The notes under the pieces: generated by a model
Told to the model about the DNA's origin: nothing
Databases searched by the model: none
Seen by the model: the letters and a program-made list of their open reading frames with translations, nothing else
Translations under genes and position numbers: made by a program
NCBI RefSeq assembly: GCF_000315625.1
Contig: NW_005434670.1
Coordinates: 144,237-208,236 of the forward strand
Length of the DNA: 64,000 bases
Direction: 5' to 3'
From: Guillardia theta CCMP2712
Taxonomy: Eukaryota; Protista; Cryptophyta
Shown here: positions 2,531 to 64,000 of the stretch, piece after piece
How the letters are laid out: the number at the start of each line of letters is the position of its first letter
How positions within the stretch are numbered: the first letter of the stretch is position 1

Positions 2531-5233
2531 CTGGGCAAGGAGACTGCGATGCCCAACAAGCTCTACAAGAATGTCATCGGAGACGCCTCAGGTAGACGCC
2601 AGCTTGGCCGAGGAGAGAGGGAGAGCTGAGAAACCTCTGCAGGGACCATCTCCATCATCTACTCTCAAGCTCTCCGACAGGCCGCAAACTTCCAGCGAGG
2701 AGGCACGTACCGACTGTCCGGGCAGGTTCAGGCAGCGCAGGGTCACTTCCTCCTCCTCCTGTCCTCATGCTCTCCAGCAAGGTCGAAGGTGCTGGAGGAC
2801 AAGGTCGACGGCTACGCGGCCGCTGTCTCAGCCTCACACCCCAACGCCACCTCCTCCTTCACGCGCTACTTCGGCGTCCTCCTCCTGCGCGGCTCCAAGT
2901 GCGTCCTGGTGCGCAGCAAGGAGCAGCCGGCGAGATGGGAGGGGCTCAGGATACCCATGGAGAGGATGAAGGGGACGGAGACGATGGAGGAAGCGGCGGT
3001 CCGAGCCGTCTGCGAGCAGTGCGACTTGAGGGAGGAGGAGTTGAGGATATGCCGTGAGATGCCTCCTAGCGTCTTCTACCGCAGGGCCGAGGGAGGAGGG
3101 AAGGAGGTCGTCACGATCTTTACGGGGTTTGCGACGTTTCCTCCCCCTGAAGACGGAGCCATGGACGACGAGGTTTGAGCGGTCGGTGTAGGGAGGGAGG
3201 GGAGTGACGGGCATGCAGGAGGAGGAGGAGGACGAAGACGACCTGTACGACTGGTTCTCGTTCGAGAGCGCCTTCGCGCAGCTGAAAACGGAGGAAGAGA
3301 GAGAGGTCATGAAGAGCATTGCGCAGCAGCTTCAGCGGGCTCACGACGCCGGCATCCTCCATGTGGCTCCATGGCAGCGGGGAGGAGTGTTCGGTGCCAG
3401 ATTCCTGAGGAGTCAACTCAACTTCGATCCGAGGAGCAGGCAGGACGCGGGGGGCGCGTTTCCCCTCTCCTCCACCTCCTCAGCTCCTTCCCTTCCCAAC
3501 TTCAGCCTCAACCCTTCGAGCTCTCCAAACTTCTCTCTTGCTCCTGCAGTCGCAAAGAGCGGCAAAGGAGCATCTGCAGACCTTCTAGCCAGTGCCCTGA
3601 GCGGTGCTGCAGCGAGCGCAGGAGGAGGAGAAGGAGGAGGAGGGTCTAGGAAGAGGCTGCCGGTCACCCTGCTGTCCGGGTTCCTCGGGGCGGGCAAGAC
3701 GACATTGCTGCAGCACATCCTCACGAACCAGCAGGGCATGCGAGTCGCCCTGCTAGTCAACGATCTCTCCGACGTCAACGTGGACGCGGCGCTAGTGGGA
3801 GCTCCGAGCTTCAGCGTGACGAGGCAGGAGGAGGACCTGGTCGAGCTCTCCAACGGCTGCATCTGCTGCGTCCTCCGCAACGACCTGCTGCGCGAGATCC
3901 GACGGATTGCGAGCTCGGGGCACTTTGACTACCTGCTGGTGGAGAGCACGGGGGCTGGTGACCCTGCGCACGTCGCCGACACGTTCAGCTTCGAGGACGA
4001 CTCGGGCTTCAAGCTTGACACCGTCGCTCAGCTGGACACAATCGTGACCGTCTGCGATGGCAGCTCGCTGCTACGGGAGCTGAGAAACCCCGCGGACGTG
4101 AAGGGCCAGGCGGAGGCGCTGGGGAGGATGACCGTCGCGCAGCTCATGGCGCAGCAGGTGAGATTCAGCTGGGGTGAGAGGTGGGCGGTTCTGAGCTGAG
4201 CTGGCAGATTGAGTTTGCGGACGTGATTGTGCTGAACAAGATCGACCTGTTGGACGCTCCCTCGCTGGCGCTCGCGCATGCTCTCCTCAAGGAGCTCAAT
4301 CCGGCTGCAGAGGTCTGTCCCAGCAAGAGGAGCGTGGTGGACTTGAACAAGATCCTCAACACCGGCAAGTACGAGAGGCGATCGAGCACAGCGTCCCTCC
4401 TCAGCAGGCATCAGGACCTTCCTCCTGCCTCAGGCGTCTGCACCCGCCCCGGGTGCGACAACCACGAGCACGGGCACGAGCACGAGCATGGTGGCATCGC
4501 CGGCCACAAGTCGGAGGCAGAGAGGATGGGAATAACGAGCTTCGTCTTCCGCCACAGGCGCCCCTTCCATCCGCAGCGGCTCTTCCTCCTTGCTCAGTCG
4601 TTCGAGTCTCGGTATTTACTCTTCTCCCTCCCCCCCTCCCCTTCTCCGCTCTGATGATCCCTACTGGGTTACTCTACTCATCCTGCTCCTCCTCCTCCCT
4701 CTATGACTGCTTCTCAGCGTCGGCAAGAGCGTGCTCCGCAGCAAGGGCTTTGTGTGGATTGCAACGAGGCCGGATGTGAGCGTTTGCTCTTGCTCCTGTT
4801 ACGATTCTCACCTGTCCTCCAGCTCATGGGCCAGTGGAGTCAGGTTCCTCCCCAGCAGCATTGTGGGATCATGACTTGTGCTGCAGGCTGCATCCAACGT
4901 GGAGGTGCGAGCTGGGGAGCCCTGGTAACATCCGAACTGCTTCCTCCTCCTCGTCCTCCCTTGAGCTCCTCCTCCATTTCGTCTTTCTCTTCCTTCTAGC
5001 TGACGCAAGCCAGGTGGGCCATGGTGGATAAGAAGGAATGGCCCCAGGGGATGGAGCAGGAGGTTTTCAGCACGGGGGTGAGATCCTTCCTGCAGCAGCT
5101 CCTGACCTGATGTGCACTTGTAGCTGTGGGATGACAAGTACGGGGATCGACAGCAAGAGATAGTCATCATAGGCATCGACATGGACGATGAGCTTGTAAG
5201 GTCGCAGTTCGCAGAGTGCATACTTACAGGTAC

Positions 5234-61320: not shown

Positions 61321-61504
61321 AGGACAATTCCCCCGCGCCATGCCAGCGATGTCGCTGTGGCCGCCGCCGAAGGAATGAGACGCATACCGGAATGCACCCG
61401 CGATGATCGCAACGAAAGTCTTCTAAACGTCCAGTTTAAAAGTCCAGTTTCCCCAAAGCTGCGGCAGGTTGCTTGAGGACGATCAGTGTGAGGACAATCA
61501 GGAC

Positions 61505-62530
61505 ATGAATACTACTGTCAAGTCGCTACATAGGTGCTGCTACCGTGACCGCATGCACAGCTTGCTGCAATGGCCCCACCGCATGCTCAGCTCGAGCAAG
61601 CCTGATCCATCAAGAATGCAGGGCAAGGCTGACTATCAATGCCTGAGATCTCCTCTCAACCTCGTGCATCATATGGGCGAGTATGAAAGTCTTATCCTCA
61701 GCAGATGTGCGAGTCCAGGCTGTATACGACGGGAGAAACTCCGAGTGGACAAGGAGATGAGTCGCAAGCTCGCAGAGAGTGGCGTTCTCACTGATGGCTA
61801 CATGAAGAGGTTTAACGCTGCGGTCGACGCCGCGTGCAATGAGTATAGCAAACGCTTGAAGGAATGCCATGATGAGAGTCACTTGACAATCAGTCGATTG
61901 GATGCTAAAACTCCAGACTTAAAAAAAGTAACAGAATTCCAAGCCGACCTGTGCGTGAGCTTTGACGAGGACACGGATCTTGAAACCATCTTCAAGGACG
62001 TGATCGACCAACCCGCTGCGGACGTGAAGATATTCGGACAGCCTGGAGTCTCGTATGAGCACTTTGAGATTAGAAAGGGGGAGTACATGTGCTTTGAGAT
62101 CACGGAGAAGCCAGGGAAGGTCTTTGAGAAGCTGTTCCAGGTCAATCGGCTGTACAATGTATTGAAGGACGACATGATTGGTGCAGACACAAAGATCGCG
62201 GCGATGGGCTTGTTGATGAACGGCAAGAGAGAGGAGTTTGAGATAGTCAGTTTGTGTATGAGGGAGTTCTTTTCTCTGGCTTCTGACGCCAAGTATGATT
62301 TGGCACCGATGGTGGAACCTGCCAGGATACCGTTCTTTTTGATGTACACTCCGTACAGGAATATCTTTGGAGTCATGCAGGATCTGAAGAACACGGTCGA
62401 GAGCAAGTTCAACAAAATGGAGGGCAAGTTCAATGAAATGGACGGCAAGTTCAACAGAATGGACAGCAAGTTAGATGAATTGAATAGGACGATGGGGCTC
62501 GTACTGAAGCATCTTAATATCGTACCATAA
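61505..62530 (+). CDS. Intronless uncharacterised protein with a C-terminal heptad-repeat coiled coil; candidate transposon cargo
   Basis: Open frame of ~340 aa; tail KFNKMEG-KFNEMDG-KFNRMDS-KLDELN; stop 14 bp before the recombinase ATG. Confidence 0.75.
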   Translation: MNTTVKSLHRCCYRDRMHSLLQWPHRMLSSSKPDPSRMQGKADYQCLRSPLNLVHHMGEYESLILSRCASPGCIRREKLRVDKEMSRKLAESGVLTDGYMKRFNAAVDAACNEYSKRLKECHDESHLTISRLDAKTPDLKKVTEFQADLCVSFDEDTDLETIFKDVIDQPAADVKIFGQPGVSYEHFEIRKGEYMCFEITEKPGKVFEKLFQVNRLYNVLKDDMIGADTKIAAMGLLMNGKREEFEIVSLCMREFFSLASDAKYDLAPMVEPARIPFFLMYTPYRNIFGVMQDLKNTVESKFNKMEGKFNEMDGKFNRMDSKLDELNRTMGLVLKHLNIVP

Positions 62531-62544
62531 TCGACGCGACTGGA

Positions 62545-64000
62545 ATGCCATCGGGCAGTACTTTAAACGACCGGCTCAGTCGACTCATCAAAGGTTATGG
62601 AAGGGTGGTTACTCAAAAGAAATCCACGGGAGTGATGAAGTTGAAAGAAGGCAAAAGTGTCTTGGCAGTGAGAGAGTATGGAATTATTTGTGAAAAGATG
62701 ACCCAGATACGTTCAGACACTATGGCACGAGAAATAGGATCAACAGGCTTGTTCGGATTTGCTGGTACCACGATCATGTGGAACTGTTGCTGTAGAAGCG
62801 AAACTTTAGACATTCTACATCTTGAACACTTTGATTGGGAGAACGACTGCTTGAAGCTGACAATATTGAAGACCAAGATGGACCAAGGGGGTGTTGACGC
62901 CGACATTTTTTCTCCCAGAACAAGGCACATATTTGCAGCACCCAACAAACCTATGTCTTGTCCTATCTTGGCCATTGCTTTGTATGCGTTTTCCCAAACC
63001 AGAATGAGGATAAGTCACACCAAATTTTTTCTGGGAAACGACCAGAAGCAGAGGTTTGGCCAAGTCTTGAGAAGGGTATTGTCCACAGAGGACATGCAGG
63101 AGGAAGTATGGAGGGATGTTGGTAAGTGCTAGCCTGAGGAAGTCTTGAGACTGAGATTGAAATGTGCAGGTTCGCACAGTTTTAGGAAGGGGAGCGTGAC
63201 GCATCTACTAGGCATTCCGGGAGGACCAGTCAGTACATCAATATTTCAACGAGCCAGCTGGTCCTTAGGCAACACCAAGGACAGGTACATCGGAACAGTG
63301 GAACCAGGCAATTATCAATACTGTGGGCGTATTCTAGCAGGGGACAACACCAAGAGCGAGAATTTCGATGTGTTACCTCCTCATTTCACAAGAGAAGGTC
63401 TGGCAAGAATCAACGATATTGGTATGCACAAGTTCATTGATGGATACGACACGTTCCCGGACAGCTACAAGAGATGTTTACCAATGTTCCTTGCGCAGAT
63501 AGTGTACCATCTGGACCGTCTCAAAGACATGTTTCCAAGTCACCATTTCCTATGGGGGTCACCTGTTTTTGCAGTGAAAGGCTCAAGAACAATGCAATTT
63601 TTACAAGAATTGAAAGAGCATCATATCAGTTTTTGTCGCGGGGAATGCGAAGAATGCGGTATGACCTGCAGTGGAGTTCCGATGCACGTGATGAATGTGG
63701 CTGAAATCAGGAAGCTGCGAGAGAGTCAAGAACAGGGAACAAAGCTGTTGCACGATACAGTGTTGAATGTTTCAACTTCGCTACCGCAAGACATTTACGA
63801 GCTGATCATTAGAAACTTTGAGGTGAACGGAGCCATTCCACTAGCTCAACGAGATCTGGAAAAGCTGCGGGAGGATCTGACATCCATGATGAATACAGGA
63901 TTCAGTGAAATCATGCAAGGACTTCTGACGTCGAGACTCAGGATGCAGGGTCCTGAGGAACTGACAGGGAGAGGGGGTGGAGGGGAACTGCCAATTATTG
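62545..64000 (+). CDS. Crypton-type tyrosine recombinase, 2 exons (62545-63121, 63170-beyond window end)
   Basis: Removing the 48-nt intron gtaagt...tgcag (63122-63169) gives WNCCCRSET...KTKMDQ...CPILAIALY...DV|GSHSFRKG...RASWSLGNTKDRY...YCGRILAG...LPPHF. The frame stays open to the window end. Confidence 0.9.

What the first reader, a model, noticed from the sequence alone, without database searches (positions are those of the whole stretch)
62545..64000. Intron-split Crypton-type tyrosine recombinase with a complete set of catalytic residues
Seen: the ORF track stops at 63132, but a canonical 48-nt intron (63122-63169) joins it in frame to an exon open to the window end. The spliced protein carries the tyrosine-recombinase catalytic set: R (CCCRSET, 62794), K (KTKMDQ), H-x-x-R (HSFRKG), W (RASWS) and Y (KDRY, 63286), followed by a long C-terminal extension. 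Established: intron-bearing YR genes without RT define Crypton DNA transposons, and these motifs resemble oomycete/diatom CryptonS. Inference: a young, potentially functional Crypton in a cryptophyte-like genome. The usual N-terminal core-binding region looks short or absent before M62545.
Basis: partly seen in the sequence, partly recalled or inferred. Interest (0 to 1): 0.8.

Follow-up and report, generated by a model that had tools for sequence, protein, structure and literature searches.

The report
Truncated copy of algal Crypton transposon
The stretch is a beheaded, probably dead copy of a 3.5-kb "Crypton" jumping gene of the alga Guillardia theta whose single gene encodes a Cre-like tyrosine recombinase; the predicted intron and catalytic residues are real, but the active, transcribed copies lie elsewhere in the genome.

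Summary
The 48-nt GT..AG intron (63122-63169) is spliced out in transcript contigs of three runs. The six recombinase residues (R, K, H, R, W, Y) sit in columns that are nearly invariant across the protein family. A high-confidence model of a homologue (pLDDT 92.7) matches Cre at Z 17.6 and Flp at Z 15.4.

The interpretation needs one major correction. This copy is not a complete, potentially functional element. It is a 5'-truncated copy that starts at 62533, two bases after the stop of an unrelated tandem-array gene. It lacks 1,039 bp of the 3,468-bp element: upstream non-coding DNA, start codon and about 250 N-terminal residues, including the core-binding domain. M62545 is an internal methionine.

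Full-length copies that are 99.8-99.9% alike lie on three or four other contigs, and a 790-bp internal-deletion derivative lies on a further one. The transcripts carry their sequence, not this copy's 17 private differences. A second 51-nt intron beyond the window removes the apparent stop.

The element has one gene, no reverse transcriptase and no terminal repeats, so it fits Crypton. Assignment to CryptonS is untested. The genome holds over 80 related loci, and public data hold over 6,000 protein clusters without a Pfam model. This scan has already reported Cryptons elsewhere in this genome.

The parts
62533..64000 (+). 5'-truncated copy of a 3,468-bp Crypton-type element. It continues beyond the window to window-equivalent ~64962-64965 (L021:4962-4965).
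   Evidence: Repeat boundaries from genome search and BLAST of copies. The other copies extend 1,039 bp further 5' (L022:2962-4000).
62532..62533 (.). Truncation junction. The element sequence begins two bases after the TAA stop (62528-62530) of the unrelated gene ORF-A. One base (G) is shared by both sides.
   Evidence: Intact array units continue here with a 1.6-kb spacer instead.
62533..63121 (+). Remnant of exon 1 (codons for D-A-T-G-M...). It carries catalytic R (62794-62796) and K (62875-62877). M62545 is an internal methionine of the full-length protein.
63122..63169 (+). Intron 1: 48 nt, GT..AG, with an in-frame TAG.
   Evidence: Spliced out in contigs of runs X1, X3 and X5. The same position is used in the paralogue gene model P0002.
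63170..64000 (+). Exon 2, which continues to window-equivalent 64514. It carries H (63175-7), R (63184-6), W (63259-61), Y (63286-8), the Flp/Ndc10-like extension (CGRILAG..LPPHF) and the start of the conserved C-terminal region.
61469..62530 (+). Context only, not part of the element: ORF-A, the first unit of a 2.85-kb tandem array that continues beyond the window.
   Evidence: No ORF-A lies next to any other copy of the element.

Best explanation
Window 62533-64000 is the first 1,468 bases of a 2.43-kb, 5'-truncated copy of a 3,468-bp DNA transposon of the Crypton kind in Guillardia theta. The intact element carries about 290 bp of upstream non-coding DNA, one three-exon gene and about 310 bp after the stop codon. 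Its introns are 48 nt and 50-51 nt. The roughly 924-residue protein has four parts: an N-terminal core-binding domain split by an acidic (EEQ)n stretch; a Cre/Flp-like catalytic domain with R-K-H-R-W-Y; a Flp/Ndc10-like helical extension; and a conserved C-terminal region of unknown role. By analogy with Cryptons and bacterial tyrosine-recombinase transposons, the protein would excise the element as a circle. It would then re-insert it by strand exchange at a short word resembling AGTTY. Excision and re-insertion are inferred, not shown. The window's copy probably inserted at the AGTT word at the boundary of an ORF-A array unit. It then lost 2.6 kb (the 1.6-kb array spacer plus its own first 1,039 bp) in one deletion with 1-nt microhomology; this history is also inferred. 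Lacking upstream region, start codon and core-binding domain, it is most likely an inert relic. The transcribed, spliced and polyadenylated mRNA comes from the near-identical full-length copies on other contigs.
For: Copies and ends:
- Six copies share 62533 onwards; the other five continue upstream with coding sequence for the N-terminal domain.
- Full-length copies lie on C43, C1, C53 and C342 at 99.8-99.9% identity, with an older copy on C93 at 93% and a 790-bp internal-deletion derivative on C127.
- Flanks differ between copies.

Transcripts:
- Both introns are spliced, poly(A) ends lie at about L021:4735 and 4820, and contigs crossing 62533 leftwards carry the full-length sequence.
- All nine listed differences from the window copy within the element (L021 2640-4643) match the full-length copies.

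Recombinase identity:
- Catalytic columns are nearly invariant in 130 family representatives, and the window's residues align to them.
- The AF2 model of homologue P0003:1-445 has pLDDT 92.7.
- Foldseek finds 27 PDB matches at E<=1e-3; all those listed are tyrosine recombinases.
- VIA-align gives Z 17.6 for Cre (274 aligned), 15.4 for Flp and 14.5 for Tn1549 integrase.
- 14 of 120 relatives hit Phage_int_SAM_4.

Crypton features:
- No terminal inverted or long direct repeats.
- All genomic copies keep the introns, so copying is at the DNA level.
- The array's uninterrupted unit boundary holds AGTT where the element's 3' end joins.
Against: - No Pfam recombinase model (Phage_integrase, DUF3504, DUF3435, NDC10_II) hits any piece, so the recombinase assignment rests on motifs and on the fold of a homologue 35-50% identical to the window's exons.
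- Exact terminal direct repeats are not seen. The 5-bp words at the two ends agree in only 2-4 of 5 positions.
- No empty site for a full-length copy was found, and no circle or excision was observed.
- The truncation junction is known only from the assembly. I could not lay DNA reads on it.
- C342 shares one flank with C1 and the other with C53, so the count of independent full-length copies is 3 or 4.
Confidence: 0.85

Rival explanations
1. One reading: this copy is itself a complete, young, potentially functional Crypton whose recombinase simply has a short N-terminus starting at M62545.
For: The retained 2.43 kb has no frameshift or stop. All six catalytic residues are intact, and only three amino-acid differences separate it from the transcribed copies.
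Against: Homology to the full-length copies runs right up to 62533 and continues upstream in every other copy. The missing part holds the start codon and the core-binding domain, which aligns to Cre's N-terminal domain in the model. No transcript carries this copy's private bases or its junction. There is no 5' terminus for a recombinase to act on.
Confidence: 0.04
2. A multi-copy host gene family spread by segmental duplication, not a transposon.
For: The genome holds over 80 related loci, some with intact frames but replaced catalytic residues, for example the C76 845-aa ORF. C342 shares flanks with C1 and C53.
Against: Copies are 99.8-99.9% alike over exactly the same 3.47 kb, with sharp ends and unrelated flanks on C43, C1, C53 and C127. 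Truncated and internally deleted derivatives exist. The catalytic set is conserved.
Confidence: 0.06
3. The recombinase module of a larger element: a DIRS/Ngaro-type retroelement or an integrated polinton-like virus. Such viruses occur in cryptophytes and often encode tyrosine recombinases (PMC12220804, PMC4642659).
For: Such elements are known in Guillardia. One Atlas neighbour cluster is partly viral.
Against: The repeat unit ends 3.47 kb apart with nothing else shared between copies. Downstream of the window's copy lie only ORF-A array units. Genomic copies keep their introns, which argues against RNA-mediated copying.
Confidence: 0.03

Closest known systems
Crypton DNA transposons (Goodwin et al. 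2003; Kojima & Jurka 2011, PMC3212892), especially CryptonS of oomycetes and diatoms
   Same: A single tyrosine-recombinase gene with introns, no reverse transcriptase, low copy number, and neither terminal inverted repeats nor long direct repeats. [quoted passage not shown] The nearest language-model clusters are oomycete and diatom hypothetical proteins.
   Different: The host is a cryptophyte. The termini are TAATCAA...GTCTGTTTA, not the TATGG shared by most CryptonS elements. The junction words are only partly alike, not exact 5-6-bp repeats. No direct sequence comparison with Repbase CryptonS was possible.
CryptonF and its domesticated relatives (Ndc10/Cbf2, Gcr1)
   Same: Atlas feature neighbours carry NDC10_II and GCR1_C. 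The model aligns to Ndc10 and Flp through the extra helices after the catalytic tyrosine, residues 380-445.
   Different: Pfam GCR1_C and NDC10_II hit neither this protein, nor 101 relatives' C-termini, nor anything in the genome's six-frame translation; the genome controls for those two searches were silent too.
Cre, Flp and Tn916/Tn1549-type integrases
   Same: The two-domain fold and the R-K-H-R-W-Y active site. Junction words that differ between the two ends recall the heterologous coupling sequences tolerated by Tn916/Tn1549 integrases; this rests on my own knowledge.
   Different: About 10-14% sequence identity. The protein is eukaryotic, intron-bearing and about 924 residues long, with a roughly 500-residue C-terminal addition. 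No recombination sites are defined.

Membership tests
Tyrosine recombinase superfamily | Catalytic R, K, H-x-x-R, H/W and Y in order | tested here: met
   The window's residues align to columns that are 88-100% conserved in 130 family representatives.
Tyrosine recombinase superfamily | Two-domain Cre/integrase fold | tested here: met
   Tested on a natural contiguous homologue (P0003:1-445, pLDDT 92.7), not on the window's own joined exons. Cre Z 17.6, Flp Z 15.4. Foldseek gives 27 matches at E<=1e-3; all those listed are recombinases.
Tyrosine recombinase superfamily | Match to a Pfam recombinase model (PF00589 and relatives) | tested here: not met
   No hit for any exon, paralogue or homologue. 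Only the N-terminal SAM-like model hits, in 14 of 120 relatives.
Crypton | Element encodes a tyrosine recombinase and no reverse transcriptase or RNase H | tested here: met
   There is one gene within the 3,468-bp shared unit, and the flanks are unrelated between copies.
Crypton | Several copies with discrete ends in different genomic contexts | tested here: met
   C43, C1, C53, (C342), C93, C127 and the window's truncated copy.
Crypton | No terminal inverted repeats or long direct repeats | tested here: met
   Only 7-mers are shared between the first and last 80 bases.
Crypton | Short (4-6 bp) direct repeats or microhomology at the two termini | tested here: inconclusive
   The 5-bp words beside the invariant core are AGTTC/AGTTA, AGCTC/AGTTT, AATTT/AGATT and ATAAG/AACTT. 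The paralogous empty site at the window's 3' junction holds AGTTT.
Crypton | Excision as a circle and re-integration | not testable with these tools
   This needs outward PCR, deep DNA reads or strain comparison.
CryptonS | Clusters with Repbase CryptonS recombinases; most share TATGG termini | tested here: inconclusive
   Clustering with Repbase CryptonS could not be tested, because no Repbase sequences were available. TATGG termini were tested and are absent. The conserved C-terminus without GCR1_C agrees with CryptonS.
CryptonF | GCR1_C DNA-binding domain after the recombinase | tested here: not met
   PF12550 hits none of 101 C-termini and nothing in the genome. The genome search's controls were silent as well. 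Feature-based neighbours are only a lead.
CryptonA / DUF3504 and Starship DUF3435 | Pfam PF12012 or PF11917 match | tested here: not met
   No hit in any Pfam scan.
DIRS/Ngaro retroelements | Reverse transcriptase/RNase H and split or inverted terminal repeats | tested here: not met
   Neither is present within the element's ends. Introns are retained in all genomic copies.

The most novel reading that the evidence does not exclude
The full-length sisters of this copy may be a currently active Crypton in a culturable alga with a sequenced genome, and this lineage would represent a very large, unmodelled protist superfamily. The family has more than 6,000 protein clusters at 50% identity, no Pfam model, a conserved C-terminal domain and occasional OTU-protease fusions. 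It may integrate by microhomology at an AGTTY-like 5-bp word while tolerating mismatches, as Tn916-type integrases do. That would make Crypton transposition, never reconstituted, directly testable.
Probability: 0.25. Interest if true: 0.55.

Novelty: new member of a known kind. Interest (0 to 1): 0.38.

Why it matters
Cryptons are the least understood class of eukaryotic DNA transposons: no excision, circle or integration has been shown biochemically. This family offers near-identical, transcribed, correctly spliced full-length copies with defined ends. It also offers a truncated copy and an internally deleted copy as natural controls, all in a culturable alga. The protein family is very large in public metagenomes and has no Pfam model, so annotation pipelines call its members hypothetical. 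For genome annotation, the lesson is narrower. The gene at 62545 should not be called as an intact recombinase gene, and the neighbouring ORF-A is not cargo of the element.

Tried and rejected
- Pfam scans of both exons, ORF-A, paralogues and homologues found no recombinase family.
- PDB sequence searches with each exon and with a 120-sequence profile found nothing.
- The first AF2 model (P0001 with 18 sequences, pLDDT 71) gave only weak Foldseek matches, with Ndc10, Flp and Cre at the top but E>0.02. It was superseded by the deeper model.
- GCR1_C and NDC10_II searches of relatives' C-termini and of the whole genome found nothing, and the controls were silent too.
- The idea that the N-terminal exon might lie at the element's 3' end, restored only in a circle, was rejected. 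The last 310 bp after the stop are full of stop codons, and the full-length copies carry the N-terminus upstream.
- The idea that ORF-A is cargo coupled to the recombinase was rejected. No other copy has ORF-A nearby, and ORF-A transcripts run into the array spacer.
- A search for paralogous empty sites with the C127 flanks found only the locus itself.
- The word search for named relatives returned only unnamed metagenome proteins.
- The exons were never joined. All searches used each exon by reference or natural contiguous homologues, so the window's own spliced protein was neither folded nor searched as one chain.

Full report
**Where the window lies.** The window is contig C4:144237-208236 of an 87-Mb, 669-contig assembly. 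The best family hit, P0002, is XP_005827789 of Guillardia theta CCMP2712, so the host is this cryptophyte. To see beyond the window end I fetched C4:204237-214236 as L021. An L021 position plus 60000 gives the window coordinate.

**Checking the observation.**
- ORF 62545-63132 is present.
- The proposed intron 63122-63169 is 48 nt, begins GT, ends AG and holds an in-frame TAG.
- Reads and contigs of four runs were laid on L021:1000-5400. Contigs of three runs from three studies skip exactly these 48 bases, with flanks of 255 letters. The intron is therefore real and used.
- Two natural homologues without this intron are collinear across the junction. One is the metagenome protein P0001 (exon 1 E 6e-33, exon 2 E 1e-71). 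The other is an 845-residue paralogue on C76.
Every search used each exon by reference or a natural contiguous relative.

**Beyond the window.** Exon 2 runs to L021:4514. The apparent stop at 4552-4554 lies inside a second intron, 4515-4565 (51 nt, GT..AG). That intron is spliced in raw RNA reads (9 reads from 7 starts, plus 28 reads with short overhangs) and in contigs of three runs. Exon 3 adds 29 residues (one split codon plus 28) and stops at 4651-4653. Poly(A) tails start near 4735 and 4820.

**Is it a tyrosine recombinase?** No Pfam model and no PDB sequence matched any piece. The rest of the evidence is as follows.
- A profile of G. theta paralogues plus P0001 (A1) was run against 1.84 billion representative proteins. 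It found 6,254 relatives at E<=1e-3 and 1,422 at E<=1e-30, most of them full-length.
- In 130 of these, R, K, H, R and Y are present in 127-130 sequences. The W position is W in 114, Q in 12 and H in 4.
- The window's R (62794), K (62875), H (63175), R (63184), W (63259) and Y (63286) fall in exactly these columns.
- An AlphaFold2 model of homologue P0003 residues 1-445, built with 120 sequences, reached mean pLDDT 92.7 and pTM 0.89.
- Foldseek against the PDB gave 27 matches at E<=1e-3; all those listed are Cre and its variants or Flp, with XerH, Ndc10 and a phage integrase just below.
- VIA-align gave Cre Z 17.6 (274 residues, both domains), archaeal Xer Z 15.5, Flp Z 15.4, an integron integrase Z 14.9 and Tn1549 integrase Z 14.5. 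All 27 chains at Z>=8 are recombinases, type IB topoisomerases, Ndc10 or ALOG.
- Fourteen of 120 relatives hit the Pfam N-terminal SAM-like integrase domain.
- Flp and Ndc10 align through residue 445. The conserved CGR..LPPHF stretch after the tyrosine is therefore a Flp/Ndc10-like extension of the catalytic domain.

**What this copy really is.** A genome search showed that sequence from 62533 onwards recurs on C342, C43, C1 and C53 at about 99.7% identity, and on C93 at 92%. The sequence before 62533 (ORF-A) belongs to a different repeat.
- Printing the junctions showed that all other copies continue upstream of the 62533-equivalent with shared sequence. That sequence encodes ...ALQGYKSALKAYYRDRNVAF, followed by DATGMPSGS....
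- Full-length copies span 3,468 bp of invariant core (L022:2962-6429).
- Their ATG lies at L022:3248. Exon 1 encodes a helical N-terminal domain interrupted by a variable (EEQ)n tract.
- The window's copy therefore lacks the first 1,039 bp: the upstream region, the start codon and about 250 residues. M62545 is an internal methionine.

**Age and expression.** The full-length copies are 99.8-99.9% identical to each other.
- The window's copy has 17 private differences in 2,435 bp. At five of them it shares the base of the older C93 copy, so it descends from an earlier insertion rather than from the recent burst.
- Of the six coding differences, three change an amino acid, and none touches a catalytic residue.
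- Every difference seen in the transcript contigs within the element (L021 2640, 3313, 3343, 3546, 3631, 4035, 4581, 4589, 4643) matches the full-length copies.
- Contigs that cross 62533 leftwards continue with full-length-copy sequence. ORF-A contigs continue rightwards into the array spacer. No record bridges the window's junction.
- The family is expressed, but nothing shows that this copy is.

**How the copy came to sit here.** ORF-A units repeat every 2,850 bp. Each unit is ORF-A followed by a 1,597-bp spacer.
- In the window, the spacer of the first unit is absent and the 2.43-kb element remnant stands in its place.
- The remnant's 3' end joins the next unit at ...GTTTAGTT|TCCCC. The uninterrupted unit boundary reads ...GTCCAGTT|TCCCC. 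The target thus held AGTT where the element's end has AGTT.
- The simplest history is insertion at that word, followed by one 2.6-kb deletion from just after the ORF-A stop into the element, with one base of microhomology. This is inference.
- I could not check the junction with DNA reads.

**Ends and mechanism.** There are no terminal inverted repeats or long direct repeats.
- The 5-bp words beside the invariant core, written 5' end / 3' end, are:
  - AGTTC / AGTTA for C1 (5' side taken from C342);
  - AGCTC / AGTTT for C53;
  - AATTT / AGATT for C43;
  - ATAAG / AACTT for C127.
- The words are alike but not identical. This fits the view that Crypton repeats reflect microhomology with the target rather than true duplication (PMC13465315). 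It also recalls the heterologous coupling sequences of Tn916-type elements (my own knowledge).
- C127 is a 790-bp derivative that keeps both ends.
- All genomic copies retain both introns, so copying is DNA-based.
- Excision as a circle and re-integration are inferred from the family, not shown.

**Comparison with known groups.** The element meets the working definition of a Crypton given in PMC3212892 and PMC13465315.
- As described for CryptonS, it lacks GCR1_C and has a conserved C-terminal region.
- The nearest Atlas clusters are oomycete and diatom hypothetical proteins, followed by NDC10_II/GCR1_C proteins. These are leads only.
- The TATGG termini of most CryptonS elements are absent, and no Repbase sequence was available, so the subgroup stays open.
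- I found no open paper describing Cryptons in Guillardia. Repbase may hold them.
- This scan has already reported expressed 3.4-3.6-kb Cryptons and dead, domesticated relatives elsewhere in this genome. This finding is therefore not the first sighting.

**Verdict.** The claim that this copy is a functional element is not supported. It is a new member of a known kind, of moderate interest mainly because its full-length sisters look active.

Noticed in passing
L021:4962-10000 (C4:209198-214236), and window 61469-62530: ORF-A (353-427 aa, coiled-coil tail with variable heptad number) forms a tandem array with a 2,850-bp unit. It is transcribed, and its transcripts run into the spacer. Diverged copies lie on C3, C265, C420 and other contigs. 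It is not linked to any other copy of the element, so it is not Crypton cargo.
   Followed up: partly
L035:1336-3873 (-) = C76: An intron-free 845-aa paralogue with an intact frame, but with R->L, H->S, W->L and Y->C at the catalytic positions. It is a likely domesticated, non-cutting relative, and the scan has reported it before.
   Followed up: partly
L043, L041, L045, L050, L038, L042, L044 (C16, C51, C59, C105, C103, C169, C276): A second Crypton-like subfamily (WNLVCRS...HSLRKG...DTQDRYI) whose catalytic residues are mostly intact. Its intron lies at a different position, between H-x-x-R and Y, and is seen as an in-frame stop.
   Followed up: partly
L022 (C342) versus L024 (C1) and L025 (C53): The 16.6-kb contig C342 shares its 5' flank with the C1 copy and its 3' flank with the C53 copy. 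C1 has a 100-N gap over the element's 5' part. This is either an assembly chimera through the repeat or an ectopic recombinant.
   Followed up: no
L059:1032-1822 (-) = C127:117631-118421: A 790-bp internal-deletion derivative that keeps 604 bp of the 5' end and 188 bp of the 3' end, with the breakpoint in the (GAAGAGCAG)n tract. It is a possible non-autonomous element.
   Followed up: partly
P0063 residues 854-943; P0113 residues 821-924: Some metagenomic relatives carry a C-terminal OTU-like cysteine protease domain. This recalls the C48 peptidases reported beside oomycete Cryptons.
   Followed up: no
L027:362-1174 and 1177-2958: The metagenome homologue P0001 was called as two genes. The upstream ORF is its N-terminal domain, separated by an unannotated intron at a position different from the window's introns.
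   Followed up: partly
L021:3991-4161: Contigs of two runs skip 169 bases here (CA..AA, not a canonical intron; 34-letter side). This may be another paralogue or an assembly artefact.
   Followed up: no
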